64,000 nucleotides of DNA, from positions 62,001-126,000 of IMG/VR virus record IMGVR_UViG_3300020438_000007. One strand, 5' to 3'. A model generated the notes under the pieces. It was not told where the DNA came from. It searched no databases and saw nothing but the letters and a program-made list of their open reading frames with translations. Below, piece after piece: positions 46,628-61,063 of this stretch (position 1 is the first letter of the stretch; each line of letters begins with the position of its first letter). The translations under genes were made by a program, and so were the position numbers.

Positions 46628-47015
46628 GAATCTTCTTTATGGTATCGGTTGTTGAATAATTTAGACGAGGTAAGAACCTTACTTCTTTGGCAAATTTTCT
46701 GCCAACTACATCTCCACCTTTCCAGTCATCTCCTAACAATAGTATATCAGGAGAGTATAATTTTATCAACCCCTCTAATTCTTTCCTATCGTTAAAGTAA
46801 AAAACTTCATCGATATATTTTATCGCTTGTAACATCGAAACTCTGTCACAAAGGTTATTGATGGGCTTAGTTTCACCCTTATCTTGACGTATCTTCTCAT
46901 CGGTATCTGTTGCTACTATTAGTTTATCTCCTAGAGATTTTCCAACTTTAAATAATTCTATATGGCCTGGGTGTAGAATATCGAATGTTCCATTACACCA
47001 TACTATTCTATTCAT
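46620..47015 (-). CDS. Heptose-1-phosphate adenylyltransferase (HldE/RfaE domain II)
   Basis: NGTFDILHPGH, KGETKPIN, GDDW, YSTT. Confidence 0.85.
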   Translation of the reverse strand: MNRIVWCNGTFDILHPGHIELFKVGKSLGDKLIVATDTDEKIRQDKGETKPINNLCDRVSMLQAIKYIDEVFYFNDRKELEGLIKLYSPDILLLGDDWKGGDVVGRKFAKEVRFLPRLNYSTTDTIKKIRG

Positions 47016-48499
47016 AATGTATCTATGGTCTCACTAAGATAAAGTGTTTGAATAACAGAGTCTGCTTGATTTTTAGGCAGAGTGTTCTCAATATAATTTG
47101 TTAATCTAGGTATGACAGATTGATCTGTTTTCCAATACTCTTTAGGATTGATATCATTTGTCATTAACTGTAGTAACCATACTTGCCAGTTAGTACCATC
47201 AAAGAATGAACCCAACTTTCCTGTTTGAGGAGTTTTTACATTGGGATCTTGAATATATTCCTCTATTATTTTTTGCATTGGTGATTTCTGATATTTAGAT
47301 CTAACATAATCCCAAAACTTGCCTTCCCTTCTACAGTAGGAATAGTGCATATTTACATAATCCACTGCACTCTCATAACTACACTTCATTTTAGCATCAT
47401 AGAGAGGTGATTCTACTCTACTATTAAAGTAACCACCATAAAGACTTTCATCCAAATATTCAACACCTCTAATCATCAGTGCAAGTCCTGTACTTTCTAA
47501 TGGTTCAATAAATCCAGCAGAAAGTCCAATAGGAACTACATTACCCTCCCAGAAGTTTTTGACATATTGAGGTTTCCAATCAAGCAATCTCATTTCATCT
47601 GGTTTGATTCTACCGTTCCAATGATCCGAGAAAGCTTGTCTTACTTCATCTGGATCATTGATATCTCGATTGAAACAATATCCTGTACCTATTCTAGATC
47701 TTGTAGGAATCTTCCATATCCAACCATGTTCCTGTGCAGGGCAAGCAGTATATGGATGTTGTTCTACTCTGTAATCTTCATACTTTACTCTACCAGCAAG
47801 AGCAGCATTTATAAACAATCTATCACCTAGATCAGTATTATCTTTACCAATTAGAAGTTGTTTCCAACCAGTACAATCTACAAATAAATCTCCAGTAATT
47901 ATTGATCCATCATCTAATACCAATTCTTTGATATTGGATTTAGTTATATCGTCTGCTTGTCCATCTCTAATAACATTTACTACATCAGATTGAATATATT
48001 TACAATAAGGTATAGTGTGTTTCATTAAAAACTGCACTAGCTTTCCACAGTCAATCTGAAAGGCGTATGAATCATGAGTATAATCTGTTTCTATTCTATT
48101 TGACCTAGAAGAGACATACATTGGAGAGATATTTTTTATATCATACTTATCTTGAAATGATTGCCATAGGTCATATAAAGGTACTTTAGAATCTCCTACA
48201 CTTGTAAAAGAAAAAGGATGCCAAATTTCTTCATCTTCATGACCCCAGCCAGGAAATAATATACCAGACTTAAATGTTGCATCTACTTCTTTCAACCATT
48301 CTTTAGGTTCATATCCCATTTGTCGCATGACATTTGGGAAACTAAGAAGGGTTGCTTCTCCTACACCAATTCTTTCTGGTTCAGACTTATCGATAATTAC
48401 TACTTCAAAATCTTTTGACCATCTACGAGCAAACCAAGATGCTGTAATCCATCCAGCAGTTCCTCCCCCAACAATAACTAATCTTTTAATTCTTTTCAT
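47012..48499 (-). CDS. Flavin-dependent (tryptophan) halogenase-like protein
   Basis: GGGTAGW, GVGEAT, ATFKSGI (catalytic Lys position), FVDCTG, GWIWKIP, FIEPLESTG. Confidence 0.88.
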   Translation of the reverse strand: MKRIKRLVIVGGGTAGWITASWFARRWSKDFEVVIIDKSEPERIGVGEATLLSFPNVMRQMGYEPKEWLKEVDATFKSGILFPGWGHEDEEIWHPFSFTSVGDSKVPLYDLWQSFQDKYDIKNISPMYVSSRSNRIETDYTHDSYAFQIDCGKLVQFLMKHTIPYCKYIQSDVVNVIRDGQADDITKSNIKELVLDDGSIITGDLFVDCTGWKQLLIGKDNTDLGDRLFINAALAGRVKYEDYRVEQHPYTACPAQEHGWIWKIPTRSRIGTGYCFNRDINDPDEVRQAFSDHWNGRIKPDEMRLLDWKPQYVKNFWEGNVVPIGLSAGFIEPLESTGLALMIRGVEYLDESLYGGYFNSRVESPLYDAKMKCSYESAVDYVNMHYSYCRREGKFWDYVRSKYQKSPMQKIIEEYIQDPNVKTPQTGKLGSFFDGTNWQVWLLQLMTNDINPKEYWKTDQSVIPRLTNYIENTLPKNQADSVIQTLYLSETIDTL

Positions 48500-48541
48500 G
48501 GTCTTCTTGATATGGATATTCGTATTCTTTTATCTCTCTCA

Positions 48542-50344
48542 TCAGTTCTTTACTTCGATCATAAGACCATGTTCAGGCAGATAGAGGTATTCTATCAAAC
48601 TGTTTGCAAGAGTCCTCAGAGCGTCATCTAGGGTCTCTACAAGAGGTTCTCCGCCTAGGTTGAAGGATGTATTGAAGATAATAGGACATCCTGTCTTCTC
48701 GTAGAAGGTATTGATTACATTATAGTAATTTGGATTCACTTCTTTAGTAACAGTCTGTATCCTACATGTATCATCAACATGAATAATTGCTGGAATCTTT
48801 TCTTTGATTCCTTCTTGACATTTAACTGCATACATCATAAATGGTGTATCATCCATACCACGAAGATCAAACCATTCATGCACATGTTCTTTCAATATTG
48901 ATCCAGCAAAAGGCCTGAAATATTCACGACGTTTGATGGCATTGACATGATCTTTTCCTTTAGGATCTCTAGGATCGTACATGATTGATCTGTTACCCAA
49001 TGCACGAGGGCCAGCTTCCGACTTACCTTGGAACATTGCAACAATATTTTTCTTCGTAATCAAATCAACTACGTCTTCATCTGTTGCCTCAAAGATCCTA
49101 GTTGCATCATAATAATTTGCAAGGTCTGTAATATACTCGGTATCATATTCATGTACAGGTCCATAGTATAGATCTGTCATGGGTGGATGAACTTTCGTAT
49201 TCTTACTTACTTTCTGGTAGTGCCAGTACGCAGCACCTATCGCTGTTCCAGCATCATTACTTACTGGTTCTACAAATAGATTAATACCTTCATCTTTTAG
49301 TTGTTCAAGATACCAATAGTTTGCAACACAGTTTAATCCATATCCACCAGAGAGAACAACATTCTTTTCTCCACTCATCTTAACTGCCTTACGAATCAAA
49401 TCCAGAACCATCTGTTCTGATTCTATTTGAATAGCATAAGCCATATCTCTACGGTTTTGTAATTTAGTAATATCCTTTACCGATTGCGTATCCATAGGTT
49501 CTCTTAGTTCTACGAATCTACCTTTGTTTACTATAGCACCATTAGGATAGGTAGGTACAATAAGATCTCGATTAGTGGTAGACCAATCACTCATCCCATC
49601 ATGGTCAGTGTAGATATCTGGTATCTTTAAATTCTGTTGACCGTAAGGGAAGAGTCCCATAGTTTTTCCAGCTTCAATAGGAGACCAACCACAATATTGT
49701 GTTACTGCCTCATAAGCTTTTACAATACCAGCAGTGTCATCTAAAATTAATTCATGAGTTCCCTCCTCATCTTCTCTACTAGATGGGAAATTAAATAATC
49801 TTACAGCACCATAAGGACCTCTACCTCCCTGATGTTTGTATAGAGTCTTGAACTTATCTGGATATTCACATTTGATAATCGTTTCTAGTTCCCATGTCAT
49901 CTCCTGTTCACCATCAATCTCCATAGGGATGAATGTTCCAGCACCATCTACAATGACAGATACTGCACTCTCAAATCCTGATCTAAAGAAAGCACAAGAT
50001 GAATGAAGTTTATGATGAATATGACTGTAATCTACAACTTGAGGATGTTTATAGATGTCTGCTTGACGATCAATAAGACCTAGTTTTCTTGCAAGAGAAA
50101 CGTAGATAGGTTCTCCTGTAAAATCATTAGATGCAGCCTGATCTAGAGGTTGTGTATGTGCAACTACAAGATAATCAAGTGTATCGGTGTAATCCAATAT
50201 CTTGATCATGGATGCCAAAGGACCTCCATCATATTTCTTTCTTGATAGTCTCTCCTCTTCAATGGAGAAAACTAGTTGTCCATCTTTCAGTAGGCATACA
50301 CCAGAGTTGTGACCTCTAGCGATTGCAGCAATCCATTGTGTCAT
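48542..50344 (-). CDS. O-carbamoyltransferase (NodU/CmcH/TobZ family)
   Basis: HNSG, EEERLSRKK, HHKLH, SGGYGLNC, NDAG, GPRALGNRS, RREYFRPFA, NTSFN. Confidence 0.92.
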   Translation of the reverse strand: MTQWIAAIARGHNSGVCLLKDGQLVFSIEEERLSRKKYDGGPLASMIKILDYTDTLDYLVVAHTQPLDQAASNDFTGEPIYVSLARKLGLIDRQADIYKHPQVVDYSHIHHKLHSSCAFFRSGFESAVSVIVDGAGTFIPMEIDGEQEMTWELETIIKCEYPDKFKTLYKHQGGRGPYGAVRLFNFPSSREDEEGTHELILDDTAGIVKAYEAVTQYCGWSPIEAGKTMGLFPYGQQNLKIPDIYTDHDGMSDWSTTNRDLIVPTYPNGAIVNKGRFVELREPMDTQSVKDITKLQNRRDMAYAIQIESEQMVLDLIRKAVKMSGEKNVVLSGGYGLNCVANYWYLEQLKDEGINLFVEPVSNDAGTAIGAAYWHYQKVSKNTKVHPPMTDLYYGPVHEYDTEYITDLANYYDATRIFEATDEDVVDLITKKNIVAMFQGKSEAGPRALGNRSIMYDPRDPKGKDHVNAIKRREYFRPFAGSILKEHVHEWFDLRGMDDTPFMMYAVKCQEGIKEKIPAIIHVDDTCRIQTVTKEVNPNYYNVINTFYEKTGCPIIFNTSFNLGGEPLVETLDDALRTLANSLIEYLYLPEHGLMIEVKN

Positions 50345-50348
50345 AATC

Positions 50349-51602
50349 TCAATCTTTCTTTTCTATAGTAATTGCATTTTCTTTATCAGATTTTAACAAA
50401 TTCTTGATTTCAGATTGGAAACCTTTGTTATTCTTTGGCTTCTTTGGTTTTGGAAGTTCCATAGTAAAGGTAGGTTTTGGAGCACCACTCATCGTTGGTA
50501 CACTGTCTCCTTTTCCTGATGGCAACCAATTTGATGTTCCTTGCATTGGTTGTGGTTGTTGCATGGGAGGTGCAATACCTTGTTGTGGTTGTTGAGGTTG
50601 GTTTGGTGGACAAGATTGTCCTTGCTGTTGTTGTGGAGGAACAAAAGTACCTGTGTATGCTTTCGATTTACCCAATCTCTTCCTACAAGATGCAACAATT
50701 TCATCAATATGTTTCTTACTTAGTTCCATCGATTCATCATTGAAACGATCTATTGTTTCGTCCATTGCAATTCTGATAGGAGCATATTCTCTACGTCCAT
50801 TTCCAACATCAATAATATCGAAGTCTTTGTGGCCTGGATAACTAATGTTTTCTGGATATGTGGAACCAATCACAACGGTTGCAGTCTTATCAAATGATCT
50901 TGCAATATGTTGACCCATACTGTCACATCCTAAGAAGTGATCAGCAATCTCAATCACAGCAGCCCAAACTCTCATATCACTAATTTGTGGTCTAGCAATA
51001 GGATATTTACCTTCATTCTCCTCAACAGCAAAGTGATGTTCACTCATTACAATTACTGCGTAATCTTTCTTTAGACTATTGATAATATCTACAGCTCCTG
51101 TAAGAGGCATACTTCTGGAAGTTGGATCTGCAATAAACTCTCCCATCTGTTGAATAGATCTGCCAAATGGTTGAATTACAATTACCTTGTCTTTTTTAGT
51201 AACAGATTTAATTTCTTCAACAATATTATAGGCAGTAATGACCTCTGTTTTATTGAGATTCAATGTGGGTTTAGGAAGTTTTCTAGGTTCTTTTAACCCA
51301 TTAATTGCCATATCATATGCTTGTGCTAAATTGCACTGTTGATTATAATAGTGCCACACTCTATATGGTTCTGGACTTTCGCAGTCCCTTTGTTTAATAT
51401 GTTCTTGGAATACTCTTTTATGCCAATGGTCGTAGACCTTATCATCTAATGTCGGATGTCCTTTAAAGAAGTCAGTTCCGCCCTCACAAATGATAACAAA
51501 ATCATCATGGGTTTCTGCATATTTTTCAAATGCTGGTATTGAACTTATTACTCTCCCTGCCCCACCATTGATGAAGAATGCTTTTGATCTCATAGTTCTC
51601 AT
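50349..51602 (-). CDS. GT9-like (heptosyltransferase-like) glycosyltransferase with Q/P-rich tail
   Basis: GGAGRVISSIP (cf. GGxGD...P), IQPFG, FLGCDSMGQHIA (cf. FIGNDSG.MH.A), VVIGST. Confidence 0.6.
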   Translation of the reverse strand: MRTMRSKAFFINGGAGRVISSIPAFEKYAETHDDFVIICEGGTDFFKGHPTLDDKVYDHWHKRVFQEHIKQRDCESPEPYRVWHYYNQQCNLAQAYDMAINGLKEPRKLPKPTLNLNKTEVITAYNIVEEIKSVTKKDKVIVIQPFGRSIQQMGEFIADPTSRSMPLTGAVDIINSLKKDYAVIVMSEHHFAVEENEGKYPIARPQISDMRVWAAVIEIADHFLGCDSMGQHIARSFDKTATVVIGSTYPENISYPGHKDFDIIDVGNGRREYAPIRIAMDETIDRFNDESMELSKKHIDEIVASCRKRLGKSKAYTGTFVPPQQQQGQSCPPNQPQQPQQGIAPPMQQPQPMQGTSNWLPSGKGDSVPTMSGAPKPTFTMELPKPKKPKNNKGFQSEIKNLLKSDKENAITIEKKD

Positions 51603-51620
51603 AATTCCTATAGTATATAG

Positions 51621-52280
51621 TCACATAAAAAATACCTGTGCCAGACGAGGATGTTCCTTAAACATCTTTCGATTTATGTCTGCTCCGTGGGTACATTCAG
51701 CTTCATACATTATCATTCTATTATATTTCATTGGACATGTAAACTGTATATCTTTTCGTATATTGTAATCACCATAGGCATGATCTGTCAGATATTTGTA
51801 AAAATCTGTTCCGCCTTCGCACTCCTCATCTTTGTTCAAATAAACTAGAGCGGCCCAACTAGAATTATCGTCTTTGTGATGAGTGTAACAATAGACAGTC
51901 TTAGTAAATCTTTCATTTATATCTTTGTTGGTAGTATGGTTGACCCAGAACTTTTGATTATCCCATCTATAATCAAACATTCCTTCACTAAATTGAATAT
52001 TAGTCCATTCCGAATGTTGGCAAAGTTCTTTGAAAACTGGTTTCAAAATCTCAATCATATCTGGTCTATCTTCAACAACTCTCGTTCCTATAAGACCGCC
52101 ACAATGTTCTTTGTCACCTGTTCTATCGCATGATAGAGCGTAATCCCTGACTTCATCAGGGTTCTTGTAGAAGTCATCTACTACAAATACTTTTCTCCAC
52201 TGGTAACCAGCGTCACTAAATCTATCGTAGTCATAACATTTTTTTATAAGAGAAATCTGAACAGGATTTATTTCAAACAT
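51621..52280 (-). CDS. DUF6445-family (2OG-Fe(II)-like) protein
   Basis: VDDFYKNPDEVR, HHKD, LVYLN, GGTDFY, MKYNRMIMY, RLAQVFF; paralogue of 42412..43110. Confidence 0.7.
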   Translation of the reverse strand: MFEINPVQISLIKKCYDYDRFSDAGYQWRKVFVVDDFYKNPDEVRDYALSCDRTGDKEHCGGLIGTRVVEDRPDMIEILKPVFKELCQHSEWTNIQFSEGMFDYRWDNQKFWVNHTTNKDINERFTKTVYCYTHHKDDNSSWAALVYLNKDEECEGGTDFYKYLTDHAYGDYNIRKDIQFTCPMKYNRMIMYEAECTHGADINRKMFKEHPRLAQVFFM

Positions 52281-52285
52281 GTAAT

Positions 52286-52313
52286 AAAAAAGATCCCCTT
52301 ATTAGGAGGATCT
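52286..52313 (-). terminator. Rho-independent terminator
   Basis: AGATCCTCC-TAATAA-GGGGATCT + T-tract. Confidence 0.7.
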
Positions 52314-52342
52314 TAGTAGGATATTTTATATATAAAAGTTTT

Positions 52343-53128
52343 TTAGATTGAATTAGGAGGTTGCCATGCTGTTGCTCCATCTGCATCGGATTCTGGGTCA
52401 GCAGGTGGATTTGCAAATCCAGGCTCAAATGGGAACATCAAGTCAGCAAAGTTTGGATGAACTCCAGCTGCAATCATCTTATTAGGAAGGTCCCTTAGTG
52501 CTTGGCGGTATGCTTTCCACTGGTCTTTAAGTGCATCAGGCATATCTTCTGCAAGTTGACCATCACTATTAGAAAGAACATTGTCTCTGTGACCTCTAAC
52601 ATGTTCCCATGTCTTGTCCTCATCAACACCGTTTAACTTCTGTCTAGGTGTGAAGTTGCCAATGGTAATATCGTTGGGCCCAGCAGAGCCAGGGTTTGCA
52701 ACTCTGATACTATCATAGTCAAAAAAGTCATCAGCGAATATAGTTGAAGAAAATGTAAACTGAGGATACACAGATCCATCTACCACTGGAGAGCCAGGAT
52801 GGTTCGTGTCTACACCAGCACCTCTGTCTTCTTCTTTCTCGTTTACAACAGGTCCTCTTAACTGACAGATAAGTGTATGTAAATCACTTGATGCACAGTC
52901 AACCTCGTACCATTGTACAACGTCAGCTGGTTTTGGACGACCATCTGCGATATCATCCTCTGTTAGAGGACCATATACTTCTCTTCCTTCTGCATTAATT
53001 TGCAGAAAAATCTTGTCTGGACCATCATAAGTTTGGTCTCTTTGGTTTCCATCAGATTTTGAGTGATCTGTAAGGAAAGCGTTCGGAAGATCTAACTTCC
53101 AGTTATGTGAAATAATTTTTGTTGCCAT
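52343..53128 (-). CDS. Tail fibre assembly chaperone-like protein
   Basis: C-terminal WEHVRGHRDNVLSNSD....WKAYRQALRDLP typical of tail assembly chaperones. Confidence 0.72.
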   Translation of the reverse strand: MATKIISHNWKLDLPNAFLTDHSKSDGNQRDQTYDGPDKIFLQINAEGREVYGPLTEDDIADGRPKPADVVQWYEVDCASSDLHTLICQLRGPVVNEKEEDRGAGVDTNHPGSPVVDGSVYPQFTFSSTIFADDFFDYDSIRVANPGSAGPNDITIGNFTPRQKLNGVDEDKTWEHVRGHRDNVLSNSDGQLAEDMPDALKDQWKAYRQALRDLPNKMIAAGVHPNFADLMFPFEPGFANPPADPESDADGATAWQPPNSI

Positions 53129-53160
53129 TGTGGATTTCTTCGGGTTTACTCCTTCGGCAC

Positions 53161-53168
53161 TATTTATA
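53161..53168 (-). promoter_or_regulatory. T4-type late promoter TATAAATA
   Basis: Exact consensus fused to a terminator T-tract, upstream of the chaperone gene. Confidence 0.78.
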
Positions 53169-53192
53169 AAAAAAGAGGGTCATAGACCCTCT
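53168..53192 (-). terminator. Rho-independent terminator after the Cys-rich triplet
   Basis: AGAGGGTC-TAT-GACCCTCT + T-tract. Confidence 0.75.
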
Positions 53193-53272
53193 AGTAGTCG
53201 GAATCTGCAACGCACATCCCTAAACAACGTATTTTATTTGTAGCAGTTCTCTTACAATGTCTGCAAAGAATC

Positions 53273-54064
53273 TTAGACGTAGGTGATTTTAACGAGTCCT
53301 CCTCCACCTTGACCGCCCTGTCCGCAACAACTACTTCCACAGTAGTTACTGTTTGCACCTTGTCCGCCGTGTCCATAGGGAACTGTCCAACAACCACATC
53401 TCATCCAACACTGTCTTTGTCCATATGAAACACCAAGAGTTCCGATGAATGGAGCACCTGTTGGTCTACCTTCGTTATAGTAACAGTGACAGTTGAATCC
53501 GTCAGGTCTGTATGAGTTACCACCGTGGTTGCCCATTCCGAAGTCTCCTCCGTGAGCGCCAGGTTGCATACAGCAAGTATGGAATTCAGAATAACAGTTT
53601 GCAGACCAGTCACCAGTTGCACAACCTCTAACACCACCTAAGGCACAGAAGTTAGATAGGTTATATCCATTTACATAGGAGTTACATCCGCAACATCCTG
53701 TACACTCTCTAGAACAACATCTATAAACACCAGCAGCACAGACACTGTATTGGCAACCAGACTTAGTACTAATAGTTTTAGTATTATAGTACCCTCCTCC
53801 AGCACCATGCCAGTTTTGACATCTGTTACATGAACATGCACCGTGTCCGTTACCTCCAGATCCCCATATCTCAAATGTAGCTCGTGTTACACCCGTTGGA
53901 ACTGTCCAAAGGCAACAACAGCCAGGTGTACAGTAACATGGATGTCCATAGACCCATTTTACACACCAGTTTGAGAAAGAACCCGCTTGAACCTTTGATG
54001 CTGGAATACTTCCATCCTCAAATGTCGAGGCATTAATTTGTTTATAACTTGAGTAAGTAGCCAT
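53273..54064 (-). CDS. Cys-rich Gly-rich fibre-tip-like protein, paralogue 3
   Basis: About 30 Cys in 263 aa; WTVPTGV..EIWGSGG...GGQGGGGLVKITY. Confidence 0.75.
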   Translation of the reverse strand: MATYSSYKQINASTFEDGSIPASKVQAGSFSNWCVKWVYGHPCYCTPGCCCLWTVPTGVTRATFEIWGSGGNGHGACSCNRCQNWHGAGGGYYNTKTISTKSGCQYSVCAAGVYRCCSRECTGCCGCNSYVNGYNLSNFCALGGVRGCATGDWSANCYSEFHTCCMQPGAHGGDFGMGNHGGNSYRPDGFNCHCYYNEGRPTGAPFIGTLGVSYGQRQCWMRCGCWTVPYGHGGQGANSNYCGSSCCGQGGQGGGGLVKITYV

Positions 54065-54073
54065 TTCTTCCCC

Positions 54074-54868
54074 TTAGAAGTATGTAATTTTGACGAGACC
54101 GCCACCGCCAGTACCGCCTTGTCCGCAGCACCCACCACAATATGTAGTCATAGCGCTCTGTCCGCCGTGACCGTAAGGTACGATCCAGCAACCACAACGA
54201 ATCCAACATTCTCTAATAGATTGAGTAACTTGTGTACCAATCAACGGTGCAGAAGTAGGTCTATGACCATAGTGGTAACAGTGACACCAACCTCTATAAG
54301 TATCATGTCTTGATGAAGACCAAGTACTGGTCTGGTTGCCCATTCCGAAGTCTCCGTTGTTTGAAGTAGGACCTAAACAACAGCAATTTTGTGCGTTACA
54401 AGCAGTTGACCAACTTGGGTTAGCGTTTCCACGGTTTCCACCTTTGGCACAGAAGTTAGATAAGTTGTATCCATTTACATAAGATGAACAACCTGTACAT
54501 CCATAACACTCTCTAGAGAGACATGGATAAACACCAGCCGCACAAATACTGTAAGAACAACCACCATTGGTTGTAATCATTTTGGAGTTGTAGTATCCTC
54601 CAGAAGCACCATGATAGTGCTGACATCTGTTACATGAACATGCACCAGTACCATTTCCTCCAGCACCCCACATCTGAATCCACATGTTTCCAACCCCAGT
54701 AGGGGCTGACCAGTTACAGCAACAGCCTGGTGAACAACGGCAGTTTGTACCGAATACCCATTTTACGCCGTAACTTTCGTTAGGAGATCCACTGAAACTT
54801 CCAGCGTCAAGGCTATTGTCCTCTAAGGAATCTCCACTGATTTTTTTGTATGATGAATAACTTGCCAT
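54074..54868 (-). CDS. Cys-rich Gly-rich fibre-tip-like protein, paralogue 2
   Basis: About 27 Cys in 264 aa; same scaffold. Confidence 0.75.
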   Translation of the reverse strand: MASYSSYKKISGDSLEDNSLDAGSFSGSPNESYGVKWVFGTNCRCSPGCCCNWSAPTGVGNMWIQMWGAGGNGTGACSCNRCQHYHGASGGYYNSKMITTNGGCSYSICAAGVYPCLSRECYGCTGCSSYVNGYNLSNFCAKGGNRGNANPSWSTACNAQNCCCLGPTSNNGDFGMGNQTSTWSSSRHDTYRGWCHCYHYGHRPTSAPLIGTQVTQSIRECWIRCGCWIVPYGHGGQSAMTTYCGGCCGQGGTGGGGLVKITYF

Positions 54869-54880
54869 TTTTGTTTAATC

Positions 54881-55666
54881 CTAGACGTAGGTAATTCGTA
54901 CAACACCAGAGCCGCCTTGGCCGCCCTGACCACAACAACTACTTCCGCAGTATGTAGTCTGAGCACCTTGACCACCTGTCGCATAAGGAGCAGTCCAACA
55001 ACCACATCTCATCCAACATTGTTCCAGCTGCACCTCGGTTCCAGCTGATAGGAACGGAGCTCCTGATCCTTCTTCACTTGTAACCGCACCAGTACAGTGA
55101 CAGTTCCAGTGACCTGACCAACCTTTTTGGTGAGGAGCCATTGCGAAGTCTCCACCCCATGTTCCAGGCGATGCACAGCACCAGTGTCTAGATGTACATC
55201 TAATTGACCAGTCGGGGTTTGCACAACCTCTTGCACCACCAATGGCACAGAAGCCACTTAAGTTGTAACCGTTAACGTATGAAGAACATCCATCACATCC
55301 GTTACACTCTCTTGAACAGCACCTGTAAACACCACCAGCACATACAGAATATGAGCAACCAGCAGCGGTACTGATTGTTTTAGTATTGTATGCACCTCCA
55401 GCAGCACCTTGATAGTGATGACATCTGTTACATGAACATGCACCATGTCCGTTACCACCAGCACCCCAGATTTCTAGGGTTAGTTTACCTACACCTGCTG
55501 GGACAGTCCAGTTACAGCAACAGCCAGGTGTGCAATAACATGGATGTCCATAGAACATCTTGACACAATAGTCAGGGGTGCCACCCGCCGCCAGCTTCGA
55601 GATTGGGATGGTTCCCGAAGCGATTTGGTCGGATCTTACTTTTTTATATGATCTATAGTTGGCCAT
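54881..55666 (-). CDS. Cys-rich Gly-rich fibre-tip-like protein, paralogue 1
   Basis: About 29 Cys in 261 aa; same scaffold. Confidence 0.75.
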   Translation of the reverse strand: MANYRSYKKVRSDQIASGTIPISKLAAGGTPDYCVKMFYGHPCYCTPGCCCNWTVPAGVGKLTLEIWGAGGNGHGACSCNRCHHYQGAAGGAYNTKTISTAAGCSYSVCAGGVYRCCSRECNGCDGCSSYVNGYNLSGFCAIGGARGCANPDWSIRCTSRHWCCASPGTWGGDFAMAPHQKGWSGHWNCHCTGAVTSEEGSGAPFLSAGTEVQLEQCWMRCGCWTAPYATGGQGAQTTYCGSSCCGQGGQGGSGVVRITYV

Positions 55667-55717: not shown

Positions 55718-58700
55718 TTAGATGGAGAAGATTCTCCAACCGTATGTATCACCTGAGAAGATAAGTGTAAATGCGGCACTTTCTGTTTGAACAGTCAGGT
55801 CAGAAGCATCACCTTGGATGTTCTTACCGTTTCTTGCACAAACTAGTGCGTTAGAATCAAACGTCTTCGCAACGTCCATGAAAGTGACCTCATCACCCAA
55901 GTTAGGTGTTGCAGGCAAGGTCAATGTGACCTGGCCGCCACCTGTGTTAACAAAGTACTTAGTTCCAGCAACAACAGATCCACTTGAGGCAACTGTGGAG
56001 TACTGAGGTACACCAGGCTGAATCCATGCAGTACCGTTGTAGTACTCAAGAGCACCCAAGGTAGTGTTGAATCTTAAGCAACCAGTGTTGAACTCATCGT
56101 CGATACCGCCAGGTCTCTGACCTGTTGTACCAACTGGAGGTGTCATTGCCTTGGTTCCCATCTTCGCACGGGTTAAGAAACCTTTAGTTGCGAATTCAGT
56201 TGGACAAGCAGTGTTTGAGTTACCAGCGAGTGTCTCATCAGATGAGAATTCGTTGATCGCCTCACCGACCTGACCACCAATCGCACCAAGTCTCAATTCT
56301 GTCAAACCAGAAAGGTTGAACGCAGAAGCATCCAATGTAGCACGACCAGTCAACTGGTCAACGGAGAAGAAGTCTCCAACTCGGAAGTTACCACCTTGGT
56401 CGGTAGATACGAAGAACACCTTACCAGGTCCGAACACGTTAGTTTCTTGACCTTGGATAACGTTCGCCAAGTTGACGTTTGGATATCCAGTCTCAGTCTT
56501 GTTACCAGTACCAACTGCGAGGAAGTCATGTCCTGTTAGTCTTGCCTGTGAGAACAATGTTCTGATTTTAATATCGGAACTATTATTAGTACCGAGGTGT
56601 CGAGTATCCCATGTTCCATTTGACTTCTCAGGAGAGATCGTCAGAGTTGCACGGTTACTGAATACCGTTTGTACACCAGCGACTGATCCTGCTTGCCACT
56701 CATAGAAAGTGGATGCAACGGACACGCCCGTAATTGTGTTAATAATGTAGAACCTATCGTCAGCACCATATAGTGATGTCTGGAATCCGATAGCGTCACC
56801 GATTAATAGAGTAGCAGAAGTTTGGTCAACTTCTAGAATTGTACCTTTCTGTCCAGTTGTGGAAGATGCAGCTGCACCGACCGTGATTGAACCGACACCA
56901 GAACTCTGTTCTGCACCAGCACCGAACCAGATGATCTCACTGTCTACGAAACCAGTGGTTCCGATTCCAGCGTTACCGTATCCAGTCTGATACTTGAAGT
57001 AAATCTTATCAGCAGAGATCTGATCGTTCAAGAACCATCCAGTTGCCTTAGATGTCTGACCGAACATTGTAGCACCTAATGCCACTGTTCCAGACTTAGT
57101 TGTACCTTGAACTTCCATCATGTCACCGAAGACTTTTGCAGTTCTCGGAACTTCATCAGTTGAGAAACCAGATGAGATAACACCGTAGTCTCCGTAAGAG
57201 TTGTTTCCACCAACACCCCTGATTCTTGATCCACCACCTGAGTAGTAACCCCACTTAGCGTAGTATGTGAAACAGGAAACGATTTCAGCGATTGCACCCT
57301 TATCAAGGATGTAACCAGCACCGTCAGATGCAACGTGCGTAAACGCATCGAACACCATTGATTTTGCACCTGTGTCGTGTACACCACCATCGATGAATAC
57401 ACCAACACCACCACCACCGAATCTGCCACTTTCTGTTGCAGGGTCAGAGAAACAAGTACAGTCCTTAACGTAAGGTGACTTGTTATCGATAGGTGAATCT
57501 GGGTTCAAGGAGATGAACACACCAGCAGCGGTTGTACCGATACCAGTTCTTAAGTTTGCATTGTCTAACTCTAAAGGAGCGTTAGGATCATAGTAGAATC
57601 CTTCCATTCCTTTCATGGAGATTGCCTGAATGGTTGTCGCATCAGACATCTTAAACATGTGACTCCTGTTGTTAGGAGTTGTAGAGTCATCAGATGTTCC
57701 CTCTTTAGGAAGAACCTGTGAACCTCTAAGTGCGTTACCAACAATCGAAGTGAAAGGAGGAACTGTAACTGGTAACTGTTCGTAGAACTGAGACGCAGAC
57801 AGTTTCAAGATAGCAGGTGTTAGGTCTGTTACCTTACCGCCTTCAACGTATGTGTGGTTGATAGTTGAGATACCAACGTTAACTTTGAATGAGTCAGAGT
57901 TATCAACTTGAAGAACCTCATAGTAGGACTTAGAGACCTTATCAGGATACTTGGTTGTTGTTAGACCAACGAACGCAGTACCACCAGAAACATAGAGGTA
58001 ATCAGTAGTTGAAACACCTACGTTAAGAGTGATTGAGTTAGAGTCAGGAACACCTTGAACCAAGAATTCGTAAGAACCTTGAGTATGTACAGCAGGGAAC
58101 TTACCAGTGATTGTCTGGTTATCAGATGCAGTACCAACGTTGATTGTAATTGTGTTGGTAGTAACAGAAGTAATGTTTAGAGCAGTGTTGTATGCAGGGT
58201 CTGGGTTTCCATCTCCAGCAACAGCACGAGGATAAGCGTGATCAGTTGTGTATCCGTCCATTGAACAACGGAATGTTAAACCATCTTCCGCTAGTTTTAC
58301 AGAAGTACCAACTGTTAATGAGTGAGCACCAATTGTACAAACCATGTCACCAGTTGCTTGGTTATAAGAAACCGCAGTTGGTTGATGATTGATGATTGGA
58401 GAAGATCCAACGTTTACAGTGAATGTATCAGTTGTTGTACCTGTAATTGATAACTGTTGTCCTCTTGCAGGGTCTTTGCCAGGTCTAGGATATGTCTTCT
58501 GAGTGGCATTGTTGTTCATCGTACAGGTGAACGTAAATGCGTTATCCCCAATGGTAACTTTATCAGAAGTTGATAAACTATGACCAGTAAGGGTCATAGT
58601 GAAGTTACCATTTGAAGGATCGTATGTAGCACCTGTAGGTGTTACTGAAGATCCACCAACAATTGAAACGCCGTTTGCAGCGCAACTGTTGAATGTGTGA

Positions 58701-60157
58701 GCGTAGTCACCACCAGATTGGATGGCGTTTGCCTCAGCGGTTTTGAAGGTGTGAGCAAACTGTGCAGAACCTGTGTATTGAACACTTAAGTTTCTGATTC
58801 TAACAGTAGCACCAATTCCAATTTCAGGAGCACCACCAAGACCAATAGCAGTGATCGTTGCAAGACCAACCGCACCGTTGTAGGTCATACCCAAGACGGT
58901 GAATACGTTACCTCCAGATAGACACTCAAACTCGATGTCTTGTAACTGAACGAACGTACCAGTGTTTAACAGACCGTGACCAGGCGCAGTAACCGTTGCC
59001 ACACCAGTGGAAGCGGTATACACCATATTGGTGACATCTGTTGTAGGACGAGCAGATTGGCAAGCCGATTTAATAGTCTTAAACGCCAAGTTAGGTGCAA
59101 GACCATTGTTTCCGTCTAATCCGTCTTCGGAGTCAACGTAGTAAATTCTTGTTTGGTTACCTACAATCTCGTAGCCTGGCATTCCATTTGACTGAACTGC
59201 AAGTGCATAACCTGTAGAACCAATACCGATTCTTACATTACCTGAGTTGTAACTTAGTACGTCACCTTTGGTATTAAGAGCAGCGGATGAATCTCCTGAT
59301 GCAAGTACTTCCCAGAAGGTTCCAATACCAGCAGTAGGAAGAACATTCTTGTGAGAGTTACCAACAGAAACATAAGAATCTGAACCATATCTTGCAACAT
59401 GGCCTGGATGGTAGTCAAAGGTAGTGGAGAAACCGCCTTTGAAATTAAATCCCTTAACAAGTAAATCCCATACTTGTGTACCGTTGTAAGATTGTGGGAA
59501 GATTGATCCTAGACCAACCTGTAATGGAGAAACGTTAGTTGTAATACCGATTTTATGACGGTAGATATTACCACCATACTGTACTAAGTCTCCTCTGAAG
59601 TAAGTACCTTCTTGGTATGTTGAAGCCGCACCAGCAAGACCATCAGATAAGATGCTCCATCTTGCAGCTGGGTCTGTAGAAACACCCAAATACTGTGGAG
59701 GTTGGAATCCAGCAGTTGATGTGGATAACGCAACATAGGATGAACCGTTGTAGTTTACAACGTCACCTGATTGATATTCGGTAGTTAGATCCCACTCACC
59801 TTCGTTTTGGAATCCTTTTACATATTCTGAAACTTTCGTCTTATCGATGAAGGTTCCTTCTGATGTGTGAGCAGTGGTTACTCTGTAGACAACGTTACCG
59901 TATTTTACTAGATCGTTGATACGATAGTAAACTCCAGCAGCCCACTGTCCTTTTTGTTCTAGACCTTCAATATGGACGTTCCATTTGGAAAGGTCGTTAG
60001 CGTAAAAGTCACTGATGCTTCCTGTTGACGTGTGGTTTATAACCGCCACATAAGTGTTACCACCAAACTTGGCGATATCGTCAATCAAATAGGCTTTGGA
60101 TGTAGTCCAATCACCTGTCCAGTTGAATTTTACTCTTCCAAGTCTAAACTCAGCCAT
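55718..60157 (-). CDS. Large modular tail fibre / receptor-binding virion protein
   Basis: N-terminal W..x..Y...D.V.YGG..Y repeats, YYVD..G.D...G...AFKTI beta-helix entry, TxAxYxxxTG repeats, C-terminal LPATP..GD.V module. Confidence 0.8.
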   Translation of the reverse strand: MAEFRLGRVKFNWTGDWTTSKAYLIDDIAKFGGNTYVAVINHTSTGSISDFYANDLSKWNVHIEGLEQKGQWAAGVYYRINDLVKYGNVVYRVTTAHTSEGTFIDKTKVSEYVKGFQNEGEWDLTTEYQSGDVVNYNGSSYVALSTSTAGFQPPQYLGVSTDPAARWSILSDGLAGAASTYQEGTYFRGDLVQYGGNIYRHKIGITTNVSPLQVGLGSIFPQSYNGTQVWDLLVKGFNFKGGFSTTFDYHPGHVARYGSDSYVSVGNSHKNVLPTAGIGTFWEVLASGDSSAALNTKGDVLSYNSGNVRIGIGSTGYALAVQSNGMPGYEIVGNQTRIYYVDSEDGLDGNNGLAPNLAFKTIKSACQSARPTTDVTNMVYTASTGVATVTAPGHGLLNTGTFVQLQDIEFECLSGGNVFTVLGMTYNGAVGLATITAIGLGGAPEIGIGATVRIRNLSVQYTGSAQFAHTFKTAEANAIQSGGDYAHTFNSCAANGVSIVGGSSVTPTGATYDPSNGNFTMTLTGHSLSTSDKVTIGDNAFTFTCTMNNNATQKTYPRPGKDPARGQQLSITGTTTDTFTVNVGSSPIINHQPTAVSYNQATGDMVCTIGAHSLTVGTSVKLAEDGLTFRCSMDGYTTDHAYPRAVAGDGNPDPAYNTALNITSVTTNTITINVGTASDNQTITGKFPAVHTQGSYEFLVQGVPDSNSITLNVGVSTTDYLYVSGGTAFVGLTTTKYPDKVSKSYYEVLQVDNSDSFKVNVGISTINHTYVEGGKVTDLTPAILKLSASQFYEQLPVTVPPFTSIVGNALRGSQVLPKEGTSDDSTTPNNRSHMFKMSDATTIQAISMKGMEGFYYDPNAPLELDNANLRTGIGTTAAGVFISLNPDSPIDNKSPYVKDCTCFSDPATESGRFGGGGVGVFIDGGVHDTGAKSMVFDAFTHVASDGAGYILDKGAIAEIVSCFTYYAKWGYYSGGGSRIRGVGGNNSYGDYGVISSGFSTDEVPRTAKVFGDMMEVQGTTKSGTVALGATMFGQTSKATGWFLNDQISADKIYFKYQTGYGNAGIGTTGFVDSEIIWFGAGAEQSSGVGSITVGAAASSTTGQKGTILEVDQTSATLLIGDAIGFQTSLYGADDRFYIINTITGVSVASTFYEWQAGSVAGVQTVFSNRATLTISPEKSNGTWDTRHLGTNNSSDIKIRTLFSQARLTGHDFLAVGTGNKTETGYPNVNLANVIQGQETNVFGPGKVFFVSTDQGGNFRVGDFFSVDQLTGRATLDASAFNLSGLTELRLGAIGGQVGEAINEFSSDETLAGNSNTACPTEFATKGFLTRAKMGTKAMTPPVGTTGQRPGGIDDEFNTGCLRFNTTLGALEYYNGTAWIQPGVPQYSTVASSGSVVAGTKYFVNTGGGQVTLTLPATPNLGDEVTFMDVAKTFDSNALVCARNGKNIQGDASDLTVQTESAAFTLIFSGDTYGWRIFSI

Positions 60158-60197: not shown

Positions 60198-60602
60198 TTA
60201 AGTTGGTCCGATGCTTTCATAAGCATAGTTAGGACCATTAAATCTTATAACGAAAAAGCCATCATCGTCTATGTAATAGTATAAGTTTCTTCGATCAAAG
60301 CGAATCTGTTGGTATTTATCATTCGGATCATCTATGAGTTTTTTCTCAGTAGCGATATCACTACGAATAACTGATGTTTTACCAACACCAACATCGTAAG
60401 TACCATAATCTAAACCATCACCGAATTCTGGTATAGCAGTTCCATCGTTACGATAGAATTCTCCTAATTCTGTTGAAGCAGCACTAACTTTAGAAAAAAG
60501 TAGCATCCCTTCTGCATCTCTTCTGAGTGCATACACGAAAAAACCCGACGATTCGGAGGGGTCAAACTGTCCAGAAATAGAATTACTTAGCGTAAGTGCC
60601 AT
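60198..60602 (-). CDS. Hypothetical virion-associated protein
   Basis: 134-aa ORF in the late structural operon. Confidence 0.6.
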   Translation of the reverse strand: MALTLSNSISGQFDPSESSGFFVYALRRDAEGMLLFSKVSAASTELGEFYRNDGTAIPEFGDGLDYGTYDVGVGKTSVIRSDIATEKKLIDDPNDKYQQIRFDRRNLYYYIDDDGFFVIRFNGPNYAYESIGPT

Positions 60603-60604
60603 TT

Positions 60605-61063
60605 TTAACTAGCCCTATTGTTGAATACTTTCCAAAGGGATCCATTCCAAATAAAAGTCACTGACGCACCCGAAACGTCCATGATGAAAGGAGAAGATTC
60701 TTTAACTAAATGTCCGTTTTCAAAACTGTATATTGATGTAACGTTAATAGGATGAATGCTAAAGAAGTTAGCAAAATCTTCGATCCATACCCAGTCACCA
60801 ACCGCACGAGGAGTTGGCATGGCAAGATCAAATCCATCAGGACTATTTTGGGAATCAACAGTATATTTTTGGTTTGTACTCAATGGATAAGTTCCAGATA
60901 CAAACGTCCATCTTGCTCTAGCAAGTTCAAATCCGCCAGGAGTAGCCCCGTCGTGTACAACAGCCGTATTCTTATCTGTGTCTACTGTTATCTCGGCTAG
61001 AGCTCCAGTAAAGTTAAAGTGTTCAGCTGTAGTTCCTTTTCTAAATTGAACCTGCTTGGTCAT
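60605..61063 (-). CDS. Mtd-N-like fibre attachment domain protein
   Basis: VQFRKGTTAEH..F.GALAEITVDTDK....VHDG.T.GG N-terminal motif. Confidence 0.7.
   Translation of the reverse strand: MTKQVQFRKGTTAEHFNFTGALAEITVDTDKNTAVVHDGATPGGFELARARWTFVSGTYPLSTNQKYTVDSQNSPDGFDLAMPTPRAVGDWVWIEDFANFFSIHPINVTSIYSFENGHLVKESSPFIMDVSGASVTFIWNGSLWKVFNNRAS

What the first reader, a model, noticed from the sequence alone, without database searches (positions are those of the whole stretch)
52343..55666. Three tandem ~11%-Cys paralogues plus chaperone: a putative heterotrimeric disulfide- or metal-knotted fibre tip
Three 261-264 aa genes share a Gly-rich fibre-tip scaffold (WxVPxGV..IWGxGG...GGxGGxGxVxITY). They carry 27-30 Cys at conserved positions (CxCxPGCCC, CxCNRC, CxC, CWxRCGC, CxxxCC), with variable loops between. 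Their N-termini resemble fibre coil repeats. They follow the giant fibre gene, end at one terminator, and precede a fibre-assembly chaperone. Fibres are trimers, so exactly three diverged copies suggests a heterotrimer or alternative tips. Folding ~30 Cys in a reducing cytoplasm implies metal clusters or an unknown oxidation route.
Basis: partly seen in the sequence, partly recalled or inferred. Interest (0 to 1): 0.7.

Follow-up and report, generated by a model that had tools for sequence, protein, structure and literature searches.

The report
Cysteine-rich triple tail-fibre tip genes
A marine cyanophage carries three neighbouring, unusually cysteine-rich copies of a known type of tail-fibre head protein plus an assembly chaperone, and related phages keep a fixed copy number, which suggests (but does not prove) a three-different-chain receptor-binding tip.

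Summary
On the minus strand, three tandem genes (261, 264 and 263 aa) carry 29, 27 and 30 Cys, 10-11% against a genome median of 1.1%. They follow a 1479-aa fibre gene, end at a terminator-like hairpin and precede a Pfam Phage_tail_APC chaperone.

The window is a T4-like cyanomyovirus about 85% identical to Synechococcus phage S-SSM7. The predicted fold is a TNF-like sandwich plus a glycine-rich domain. Its best solved match is the cyanophage Pam3 fibre gp24, a homotrimer that needs a chaperone.

All 83 window-type loci have exactly three copies in the same order. So do 59 loci of a distant clade and phage S-CAM3. A longer-protein clade that includes P-SSM2 usually has two. Copy number is therefore fixed within a clade, not universal.

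An A+B+C trimer is predicted with ipSAE 0.87 (best control 0.37), but homotrimers were not tested.

Cys counts show no even/odd preference, so not every Cys can sit in a disulfide. I could not decide between disulfides and metal sites.

Best reading: a chaperone-assembled receptor-binding head, probably heterotrimeric (about 0.5), held together by cysteine cross-links. It is a new variant of a known kind. Databases list these proteins as hypothetical, and I found no paper on them.

The parts
55718..60157 (-). Giant tail-fibre gene (1479 aa) just upstream. It is the presumed carrier of the tip, or a neighbour in the same transcription unit.
   Evidence: PHROG phrog_9851 'tail fiber protein' E=0, and three CBM_5_12 repeats in Pfam. 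The orthologue in S-SSM7 is annotated 'phage tail fiber-like protein'.
55733..55999 (-). C-terminal ~90-aa domain of the giant fibre (residues 1387-1475). Candidate adaptor next to the tip genes.
   Evidence: Matches phrog_31104 and phrog_9648 'tail protein'. It is 36% identical (E 7e-18) to a free-standing 110-aa gene that sits directly before the Cys-rich genes in the 'split' clade. Small genes occupy that position in S-CAM3 and P-SSM2 as well, but I did not compare them.
54881..55666 (-). Paralogue A, 261 aa, 29 Cys: short N-terminal segment, TNF-like sandwich and glycine-rich domain.
   Evidence: Pfam Gly_rich_2 PF21722 at 31.7 bits (cut-off 24.3) and phrog_4205 E 1e-58. dN/dS 0.15-0.23. 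AAGGA lies 7 nt before the ATG.
54074..54868 (-). Paralogue B, 264 aa, 27 Cys. It lacks the Cys at positions 34, 117 and 148 that A and C have.
   Evidence: phrog_4205 E 2e-56. 53% identical to A. Position-B proteins form one clade, 69 of 70. An AGGA overlaps A's stop codon; the gap is 12 nt.
53273..54064 (-). Paralogue C, 263 aa, 30 Cys. This is the copy that was modelled.
   Evidence: phrog_4205 E 3e-66. AlphaFold2 model pLDDT 78, pTM 0.75. VIA-align Z 16 to Pam3 fibre 7YPX_A, 11 to a Bxb1 tail-tip chain and 7-9 to ALK/LTK glycine-rich domains. The gap to B is 9 nt with a GGGGAAG motif.
53174..53192 (-). Terminator-like hairpin (8-bp stem, 5 G-C pairs, then a T run) after C and before the chaperone gene.
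   Evidence: Consensus scan and the sequence itself. This is a pattern match only; function is not shown.
52343..53128 (-). Tail-fibre assembly chaperone-like gene (261 aa): N-terminal beta-rich domain plus C-terminal helical hairpin.
   Evidence: Pfam Phage_tail_APC PF16778 at 40.9 bits (cut-off 26.6), residues 175-217. PHROG 'tail fiber assembly' families and phrog_9740. Model pLDDT 80, helices 174-191 and 198-220. Present after the copies in all related loci that reach that far.
52290..52314 (-). Second terminator-like hairpin, after the chaperone gene.
   Evidence: Consensus scan.

Best explanation
SHOWN BY SEQUENCE OR PREDICTION
- A, B and C are three long-diverged paralogues under purifying selection.
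- Each is a short N-terminal segment (about 35 aa) followed by a predicted TNF-like beta-sandwich. Glycine-rich loops extend from the sandwich. This is the architecture of the cyanophage Pam3 tail fibre gp24.
- They are co-transcribed behind the giant fibre gene. The next gene is a Tfa/gp25-type assembly chaperone.

INFERRED
- The three chains form the distal receptor-binding head of a tail fibre.
- Most probably they form one A-B-C heterotrimer. The paralogue-specific N-terminal segments would form the trimerising and attachment stalk. The chaperone would hold the loop-rich heads during folding and then leave.
- The variable loops (about 152-163, 176-200, 207-217) would make an asymmetric receptor-binding surface.
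- The roughly 28 Cys per chain lie almost entirely inside each subunit. I take them to be a cross-linking lattice that stiffens the glycine-loop head. That would be mainly disulfides formed late in infection or after release into oxic seawater, with at least some Cys free or metal-bound.

MY ODDS
- Fibre-head module with chaperone: about 0.85.
- Heterotrimer rather than separate homotrimers: about 0.5.
- Mostly disulfides rather than metal sites: about 0.55.
The confidence figure given for this explanation (0.5) is for the whole statement including the heterotrimer.
For: Fold
- AF2 model of C has pLDDT 78.
- Best solved match is Pam3 fibre 7YPX_A (Foldseek E 2e-5, VIA Z 16). Next come a Bxb1 tail-tip chain (Z 11) and ALK/LTK TNF-like plus glycine-rich domains (Z 7-9).
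- Among predicted viral structures, 197 match at E<=1e-3. They include 'glycine-rich domain' proteins, tail fibre and minor tail proteins, and collagen-like proteins.
- A passes the Pfam Gly_rich_2 cut-off.

Pam3 precedent (PMC9608196)
- It needs chaperone gp25 at 3:3.
- Its N-terminal bundle provides most of the trimer contacts.
- Its distal loops are the variable, presumed receptor-binding part.

Module
- Fibre, A, B, C and chaperone keep the same order in 83 of 83 loci.
- Pairwise distances of A, B, C, the chaperone and the fibre C-terminus co-vary, r 0.82-0.95.

Copy number
- Exactly three in 83 of 83 window-type loci, 59 of 59 'split' loci and S-CAM3. There are no pseudogenes and no near-identical duplicates.
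- The tandem A/B/C proteins form one clade apart from the X, Y and Z clades (stem support 100). So three copies arose, or were re-made, more than once.
- N-termini are the most paralogue-specific part: 25-55% identity against 52-71% in the body. B's N-terminus is position-specific.

Trimer prediction
- A+B+C scores ipSAE 0.87 against a best control of 0.37. That mark was reached by 58 of 80 solved complexes and 2 of 110 mismatched pairs.
- The interface uses residues 8-35 and the sandwich faces.

Cysteines
- Only 1 of 29, 1 of 27 and 4 of 30 Cys lie in the predicted inter-chain interface.
- About nine Cys positions are conserved across all clades.

Precedents
- Pam3 virions contain several disulfides, shown by MS and DTT sensitivity (PMC9942802).
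- Three consecutive virophage tail genes form a 1:1:1 heterotrimer in vitro, with a different fold (PMC12724248).
- From established knowledge: C1q heads are A-B-C heterotrimers encoded by three clustered genes, and lymphotoxin alpha1-beta2 is a 1:2 TNF-family heterotrimer.
Against: - No experimental datum exists for these proteins. I found no virion proteomics for S-SSM7-type phages.
- The solved relative Pam3 gp24 is a homotrimer.
- Copy number is not three everywhere. P-SSM2 has two, and the long clade has two in 47, one in 5 and three in 4 of 56 complete loci. So a single gene can suffice for this fold, and separate homotrimers remain plausible.
- The complex predictor also passes close cousins of a true partner, so 0.87 does not discriminate hetero from homo.
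- Attachment to the giant fibre is inferred from gene order only. Pam3 gp24 attaches directly to the baseplate.
- Cysteines: totals per chain are even in 146 and odd in 172 sequences. The A+B+C sum is even in 22 and odd in 47 loci. There are 21 near-invariant Cys columns, an odd number. Variable Cys co-vary only weakly, best phi 0.5-0.6. So a complete disulfide pairing is impossible in most members, and metal sites are not excluded.
- No coordinates were available, so no Cys-Cys distances were measured.
Confidence: 0.5

Rival explanations
1. Three separate homotrimeric heads. Each paralogue trimerises with itself, as Pam3 gp24 does. The phage then carries two or three alternative or co-existing tips with different receptor specificities.
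For: - The only solved close fold relative is a homotrimer.
- Relatives work with two copies or one (P-SSM2; long clade).
- Each paralogue has its own variable loops in the same places.
- In the 'split' clade the first copy has its own chaperone gene and the other two share a second one.
Against: - Alternative tips should be gained and lost freely. Yet none of 142 complete three-copy loci in two deep clades shows 2 or 4 copies, a pseudogene or a recent duplicate.
- In the window's clade one chaperone serves three genes.
- Gene order is fixed with 9-12 nt spacers, which fits equimolar co-assembly.
Confidence: 0.3
2. The cysteines are mainly metal ligands (Zn-thiolate or Fe-S-type sites) rather than disulfides. 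The head would then fold in the reducing cytoplasm around bound metal.
For: - There is no even-number preference in Cys counts, and 21 near-invariant Cys is an odd number.
- Motifs of the CxC, CC, CxxC and CxxCxxC type are present; residues 121-127 are conserved within the window's clade. Conserved His lie next to Cys, as in GHGAC and CHC.
- B lacks a trio of Cys (34, 117, 148) rather than a pair.
- From established knowledge: T4 gp37 and gp12 fibres bind Fe and Zn.
Against: - The proteins are not metallothionein-like. They have 10-13% aromatic residues and a confident beta fold.
- The CxxCxxC motif is not conserved outside the window's clade; position 127 is Cys in 17% of the split clade.
- The virion lives in oxic seawater, where exposed thiolates oxidise.
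- Cyanophage Pam3 shows that virion disulfides do form.
Confidence: 0.25
3. gp38-type monomeric adhesins. Each protein caps a trimeric fibre tip as a single chain, as in Salmonella phage S16 and coliphage T2.
For: - Similar size (about 260 aa), a position right after the fibre gene, and glycine-rich motifs with variable segments between them.
- The Pam3 authors note a local likeness of the glycine-rich domain to S16 gp38.
Against: - S16 gp38 (6F45) is not among the listed matches in either PDB search. The fold found has a TNF-like sandwich, which gp38 lacks.
- The trimer prediction is confident.
Confidence: 0.05
4. Not virion parts: secreted or host-surface-modifying proteins that belong with the neighbouring sugar, dioxygenase and halogenase gene cluster.
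For: The genes lie next to a large cluster of carbohydrate and 2OG-oxygenase genes.
Against: - No signal peptide-like N-terminus is evident in the sequences.
- The fold is that of a fibre head.
- A tail-fibre assembly chaperone and the giant fibre flank the genes in every lineage.
Confidence: 0.03

Closest known systems
Cyanophage Pam3 tail fibre gp24 with its chaperone gp25 (PDB 7YPX; PMC9608196, PMC9942802)
   Same: - Predicted fold: short N-terminal segment, TNF-like sandwich and glycine-rich loop domain (VIA Z 16).
- About the same length (280 aa against 261-264).
- A Tfa-type chaperone gene lies directly downstream.
- The host is also a cyanobacterium.
- Disulfides matter in that virion.
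   Different: - Pam3 has one gene and a homotrimer. Here there are three diverged genes in fixed order.
- Sequence identity is only about 14%, and no HMMER hit to any PDB sequence.
- These proteins carry 27-30 Cys per chain. For gp24 the Pam3 papers discuss only Cys28, which links the fibre to the baseplate.
- The Pam3 fibre docks on the baseplate wedge. Here the genes follow a 1479-aa fibre.
Pfam PF21722 Gly_rich_2 and PF12810 ALK/LTK glycine-rich domain
   Same: A passes the PF21722 cut-off. The model aligns to ALK/LTK TNF-like plus glycine-rich domains at Z 7-9.
   Different: B and C do not reach the Pfam model at E<=0.1. This Cys-rich subfamily sits in its own PHROG of unknown function, phrog_4205. 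ALK and LTK are animal receptor ectodomains that bind protein ligands.
S16/T2-type gp38 long-tail-fibre adhesin
   Same: A small protein encoded after the distal fibre gene, with glycine-rich motifs that scaffold hypervariable receptor-binding loops.
   Different: gp38 is a monomer with a different middle domain and no TNF-like sandwich. It was not recovered by either fold search.
Complement C1q globular head and lymphotoxin alpha1-beta2 (established knowledge, not tested here)
   Same: TNF-like jelly-roll heads built as heterotrimers of paralogous chains. C1q A, B and C come from three clustered genes.
   Different: Animal proteins with no detectable sequence relation. This is an analogy of logic only.
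Three consecutive tail proteins of virophage DSLV2 (PMC12724248)
   Same: Three adjacent paralogous tail genes, conserved as a trio across a lineage and related to Synechococcus-phage tail proteins. They were shown to co-purify as a 1:1:1 heterotrimer that binds Synechococcus cells.
   Different: A different fold (needle like the T4 gp37 tip, about 58 kDa for the whole trimer). The paper does not mention cysteine, disulfide or glycine. No chaperone gene is described in the parts I read.

Membership tests
TNF-like + glycine-rich-domain phage fibre heads (Pfam PF21722 Gly_rich_2; prototype Pam3 gp24) | Match to the family HMM above its curated cut-off | tested here: met
   A scores 31.7 bits against a cut-off of 24.3. 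B and C give no Pfam hit at E<=0.1, but they are 53-65% identical to A over their full length.
TNF-like + glycine-rich-domain phage fibre heads (Pfam PF21722 Gly_rich_2; prototype Pam3 gp24) | Fold: beta-sandwich from which glycine-rich extended loops emerge | tested here: met
   Predicted model only (pLDDT 78). VIA Z 16 to 7YPX_A over 218 residues, and Z 7-11 to Bxb1 and ALK/LTK domains.
TNF-like + glycine-rich-domain phage fibre heads (Pfam PF21722 Gly_rich_2; prototype Pam3 gp24) | Trimeric assembly | tested here: inconclusive
   The A+B+C complex is predicted at ipSAE 0.87 against a best control of 0.37.
TNF-like + glycine-rich-domain phage fibre heads (Pfam PF21722 Gly_rich_2; prototype Pam3 gp24) | Dedicated Tfa-type chaperone encoded next to it | tested here: met
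   PF16778 at 40.9 bits against a cut-off of 26.6 in the next gene. Conserved in the related loci that reach that far.
TNF-like + glycine-rich-domain phage fibre heads (Pfam PF21722 Gly_rich_2; prototype Pam3 gp24) | Virion component that binds the host receptor | not testable with these tools
   No proteomic or binding data were found for S-SSM7-type phages.
gp38-type monomeric adhesin (S16/T2) | gp38 fold (attachment domain, beta-helix, three-layer polyglycine sandwich) | tested here: not met
   6F45 is absent from the listed Foldseek and VIA matches. The model has a TNF-like sandwich instead.
Metallothionein-like metal-thiolate proteins | Very high Cys content with few or no aromatic residues and no independent fold | tested here: not met
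   10-11% Cys but 10-13% Phe+Trp+Tyr, and a confident beta fold. Individual metal sites are not excluded.
Fully disulfide-paired Cys-rich domains (EGF, granulin or TNFR-CRD type) | Even, invariant number of Cys; paired gain and loss | tested here: not met
   Totals range from 22 to 31, with 146 even and 172 odd. There are 21 near-invariant columns, and the best pair correlation is phi 0.5-0.6.
Phage tail-fibre assembly chaperone (Pfam PF16778; Mu Tfa / Pam3 gp25 type), for gene 52343-53128 | C-terminal conserved helical domain after a variable N-terminal client-binding domain | tested here: met
   The HMM hit covers residues 175-217. The model shows a beta-rich N-terminal part and helices at 174-220. 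No solved chaperone was recovered by fold search, only a weak match to 2KZ6.

The most novel reading that the evidence does not exclude
The phage builds an obligate A-B-C heterotrimeric, hence asymmetric, TNF-like receptor-binding head. The glycine-loop lattice of that head is reinforced by about 85 cysteines per trimer in a mixed disulfide and metal-thiolate network. More generally, a large uncharacterised family of marine-phage fibre heads has a clade-fixed subunit number (three short chains or two long chains) that encodes the stoichiometry of the head.
Probability: 0.35. Interest if true: 0.75.

Novelty: new variant of a known kind. Interest (0 to 1): 0.6.

Why it matters
Tail-fibre heads decide which cells a phage can infect. 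For the abundant T4-like cyanophages of the ocean, these heads are almost uncharacterised.

This family is large: 406 representative clusters at E<=1e-3 in 1.84 billion proteins, and hundreds of IMG/VR loci. It is confined to a few cultured phages (S-SSM7, S-SSM6a, Sf-FS3, S-CAM3, S-CAM1, P-SSM2, P-SSM5), and where I looked it is annotated only as 'hypothetical'.

If the head is a true heterotrimer, it would be a rare case of a non-symmetric phage receptor-binding tip. Three independently evolvable loop sets could then recognise one receptor.

The extreme cysteine content raises a concrete, testable question: how is a cytoplasmically made protein with about 28 Cys per chain folded and oxidised or metallated?

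S-SSM7 and its host WH8109 are in culture, so the tests are ordinary ones.

Tried and rejected
- Sequence search of A and of the family profile against all PDB sequences found nothing meaningful. Only the fold comparison gave the link.
- The genome search with PF21722 on the window's own genome found nothing, although A passes that model in hmmscan. That tool's first look is too coarse here. Its negative result for Erv1/ALR sulfhydryl oxidase (PF04777) is therefore uninformative, and its control genomes did not ring either.
- A motif scan for thioredoxin-fold active sites gave one candidate, a 78-aa glutaredoxin-family protein with CGHC. This is a lead, not evidence.
- Model coordinates are not exposed to the Python box. 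Cys-Cys distances, the obvious test of disulfide against metal, could not be measured.
- Cys parity of the A+B+C sum, a test for inter-chain pairing in a 1:1:1 complex, showed no even-number rule: 22 even, 47 odd.
- I looked for gene conversion that spares the N-termini, by comparing N-terminus and body identities in odd lineages. There was no clear mosaic. The deep lineages are simply too diverged to assign A against C.
- The chaperone model found no solved chaperone by Foldseek or VIA-align; best Z was 6 on a helical hairpin.
- Look-ups of exact distant proteins gave only contigs under 1.5 kb, or none. I replaced them with profile-based locus searches.
- Complex prediction was used once, for A+B+C. 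Homotrimer comparisons could not be run.

Full report
WHAT THE WINDOW IS

The 64-kb window is bases 62001-126000 of a 230,739-bp viral record. The finding region is 85% identical in DNA to Synechococcus phages S-SSM7 and S-SSM6a (Kyanoviridae, Lipsvirus), which are T4-like cyanomyoviruses.

CHECK OF THE OBSERVATION

- Genes. Three minus-strand genes lie head to tail: A 54881-55666 (261 aa), B 54074-54868 (264 aa) and C 53273-54064 (263 aa). They align over their full length at 53-65% identity, with 130 invariant columns.
- Cysteine content. They hold 29, 27 and 30 Cys and 17-19% Gly. They are the three most Cys-rich of 200 ORFs in the genome: 10-11% against a median of 1.07%, with the next highest at 5.3%.
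- Motifs.
- Selection. dN/dS against three relatives is 0.11-0.23 for each gene.
- Upstream. The 1479-aa gene hits tail-fibre PHROGs and carries three CBM_5_12 repeats.
- Spacing. The spacers are 51, 12 and 9 nt, each with a Shine-Dalgarno-like motif.
- Downstream. A terminator-like hairpin follows C. The next gene (52343-53128) passes Pfam Phage_tail_APC.
- Not confirmed. The only sub-claim that fails is a resemblance of the N-termini to the fibre.

WHAT THE PROTEINS ARE

- Sequence searches against solved structures are empty.
- An AlphaFold2 model of C, built on 52 homologues, has pLDDT 78 and pTM 0.75. Its best match is the tail fibre gp24 of the freshwater cyanophage Pam3: Foldseek E 2e-5, VIA-align Z 16 over 218 residues.
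- Next come a mycobacteriophage Bxb1 tail-tip chain (Z 11) and the TNF-like plus glycine-rich ectodomain of ALK/LTK (Z 7-9). Unrelated rows lie at Z 4.5 or below.
- A also passes Pfam Gly_rich_2.
- Among predicted viral structures, 197 match at E<=1e-3. They include 'glycine-rich domain' proteins, tail fibre and minor tail proteins, and collagen-like proteins of giant viruses. ESM Atlas clusters with this shape are almost all viral.
[quoted passage not shown] The N-terminal bundle supplies most trimer contacts. The distal loop tips are variable and presumed to bind the receptor. Chaperone gp25 binds 3:3 through a variable N-terminal beta domain and a conserved C-terminal helical domain (PMC9608196).
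- The window's chaperone-like protein has that two-part layout in its model. No solved chaperone was recovered by fold search.

I counted family members in every fetched locus with profile HMMs.

| Group | Layout | Copies found |
|---|---|---|
| Window type ('tandem') | fibre, A, B, C, chaperone | 3 in 83 of 83 loci, with no fragment except at contig ends; 15 more such loci turned up in the second scan |
| 'Split' clade, about 35-42% identical | copy, chaperone, copy, copy, larger chaperone-like gene | 3 in 59 of 59 complete loci |
| Synechococcus phage S-CAM3 | consecutive genes of 329, 302 and 300 aa with 36, 35 and 24 Cys | 3 |
| Prochlorococcus phage P-SSM2 | 356 and 355 aa, 36 Cys each, with a small gene of unconfirmed function between | 2 |
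| Long-protein clade (P-SSM2-like) | loci with at least 2.5 kb on both sides | 2 in 47, 1 in 5, 3 in 4, of 56 |

So copy number does not vary freely. It is fixed within clades: short chains in threes, long chains mostly in twos. But three is not a property of the fold.

A tree places all tandem A/B/C proteins in one clade on a long stem (support 100), apart from the separate X, Y and Z clades of the split loci. The trio therefore arose, or was homogenised and re-diverged, more than once.

Within the window's clade, position B is one clade (69 of 70). A and C each form a main clade of about 60, plus deep lineages whose placement is weakly supported.

In every locus the three copies are 52-71% identical in the body and only 25-55% in the first 38 residues. 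No locus has a recent duplicate.

Pairwise distances of A, B, C, the chaperone and the fibre C-terminus co-vary across loci with r 0.82-0.95. The module is therefore inherited as a block.

TRIMER PREDICTION

A+B+C, each with a 50-row orthologue alignment, gave ipSAE 0.87 in three runs against a best control of 0.37. That mark was reached by 58 of 80 solved complexes and 2 of 110 mismatched pairs. The counts hold only roughly, because my own alignments and three chains were used.

The confident interface comprises residues 8-35 of each chain and the sandwich faces. The tool itself warns that close cousins of a true partner also pass. The result therefore supports trimer formation, not heterotrimer over homotrimer.

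THE CYSTEINES

- Across 318 distinct family sequences, 21 Cys columns are at least 96% Cys. Four more are 73-91%, and about ten are variable.
- About nine positions are conserved across all clades: 50, 51, 78/79, 109, 140, 164, 165, 192 and 219 in C numbering.
- Totals per chain run from 22 to 31 with no parity preference: 146 even, 172 odd. The sum over A+B+C is odd in 47 of 69 loci. Variable Cys co-vary only moderately. A complete set of disulfides is thus impossible in most members, whether within a chain or within a 1:1:1 head. Some Cys must be free, metal-bound or linked to another protein.
- Almost all Cys lie outside the predicted inter-chain interface. Many sit in predicted beta strands of the sandwich.
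- The proteins are not metallothionein-like; they have 10-13% aromatic residues and a defined fold.
- Pam3 shows that cyanophage virions can carry several disulfides. They were verified there by MS and by loss of fibres in DTT (PMC9942802).
- The genome encodes one glutaredoxin-family protein with a CGHC active-site motif. I found no sulfhydryl oxidase, but that search was insensitive.
- I could not obtain model coordinates, so disulfide against metal stays open. I lean to a mostly disulfide lattice (about 0.55).

HOW THE HEAD MIGHT BE ATTACHED

The last ~90 residues of the giant fibre match phrog_31104 and phrog_9648. In the split clade the homologous domain is a free-standing 110-aa gene directly before the first Cys-rich gene (36% identity, E 7e-18). 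S-CAM3 and P-SSM2 also have two small genes in that position, which I did not compare. This domain is a candidate adaptor. That is inference from gene order, and a baseplate-docked short fibre as in Pam3 is equally possible.

COMPARISON WITH WHAT IS KNOWN, AND VERDICT

The fold, the chaperone partnership and the variable-loop logic are those of the Pam3 gp24/gp25 system and of glycine-rich-domain fibre heads generally. That part is a known kind.

Two things are not described in anything I could find:
- the extreme, family-wide cysteine content;
- the clade-fixed multiplicity of paralogous head genes.

Public records and PHROGs list the proteins as hypothetical or of unknown function.

The nearest functional precedent for 'three consecutive tail genes make one heterotrimer' is the virophage DSLV2 trio. 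It has another fold and no Cys richness (PMC12724248).

I rate this a new variant of a known kind. The interpretation as a fibre-head module is well supported. The heterotrimer is about even odds, and the cysteine chemistry is unresolved.

Noticed in passing
window 61109-64000 (minus strand): Two different reading frames on the same strand are both open for about 2.9 kb, up to the window's end. One encodes a Gly/Thr/Ser-rich fibre-like protein, the orthologue of the 1529-aa S-SSM7 gene SSSM7_110. The other is Leu/Ser/Val-rich and looks like a by-product of codon bias.
   Followed up: partly
window 43880-52280 (minus strand): Directly downstream of the fibre module lies a cluster of 2OG-Fe(II) oxygenase-like genes, a tryptophan halogenase (47012-48499), a carbamoyltransferase (48542-50344) and heptose/nucleotidyl-transferase genes. 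A carbamoyltransferase follows the fibre-head module in S-SSM7, Sf-FS3, S-CAM3 and P-SSM2 as well. These enzymes could modify the fibre proteins or the host surface. Earlier authors proposed secondary metabolism (PMC2938197) or LPS genes (PMC3037559).
   Followed up: partly
window 51621-52280 (minus strand): The gene right after the chaperone is a DUF6445 / 2OG-Fe(II) oxygenase-like protein (3.7% Cys) that PHROGs label 'minor coat protein' (phrog_1644). Its position makes it a candidate modifier of the head proteins.
   Followed up: no
window 50349-51602 (minus strand): A 417-aa protein with a Gln/Pro-rich low-complexity C-terminal part. Proteins with a similar N-terminus (..FFINGGAGRV..) follow the module in P-SSM2 (PSSM2_307) and S-CAM3 (gp154), and S-SSM7's orthologue shares gene cluster T4-GC 302 with PSSM2_307. 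Function unknown.
   Followed up: no
window 53191-53397 (minus strand); S-SSM7 SSSM7_117: A 68-aa out-of-frame ORF overlaps the 3' end of gene C and the terminator. S-SSM7 has an annotated CDS at the equivalent place (SSSM7_117), which is probably a spurious call.
   Followed up: no
loci L006-L082 (IMG/VR contigs): Many metagenomic contigs start 400-700 nt upstream of gene A, inside the 3' end of the giant fibre gene. This may be an assembly break caused by population-level hypervariability of the fibre body, while the C-terminal domain and the head genes assemble well.
   Followed up: no
own genome G000:C1:228411-228647 (outside the window; L160:412-648): A 78-aa glutaredoxin-family protein (Pfam PF00462, E 8e-11) with a CGHC active-site motif, the motif of protein disulfide isomerases. 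It is the only strict thioredoxin-type CxxC candidate in the genome.
   Followed up: partly
window 60605-61063 and 60198-60602 (minus strand): Two small genes lie upstream of the giant fibre. One has a major-tropism-determinant N-terminal domain (Mtd_N, E 5e-13). The other has no Pfam hit (T4-GC 295, shared with P-SSM2).
   Followed up: no
loci L085-L159, e.g. L096:9082-10542: In the 'split' clade the second chaperone-like gene is two to three times longer (320-490 aa). It has the chaperone-like part at the N-terminus and an uncharacterised C-terminal extension.
   Followed up: no
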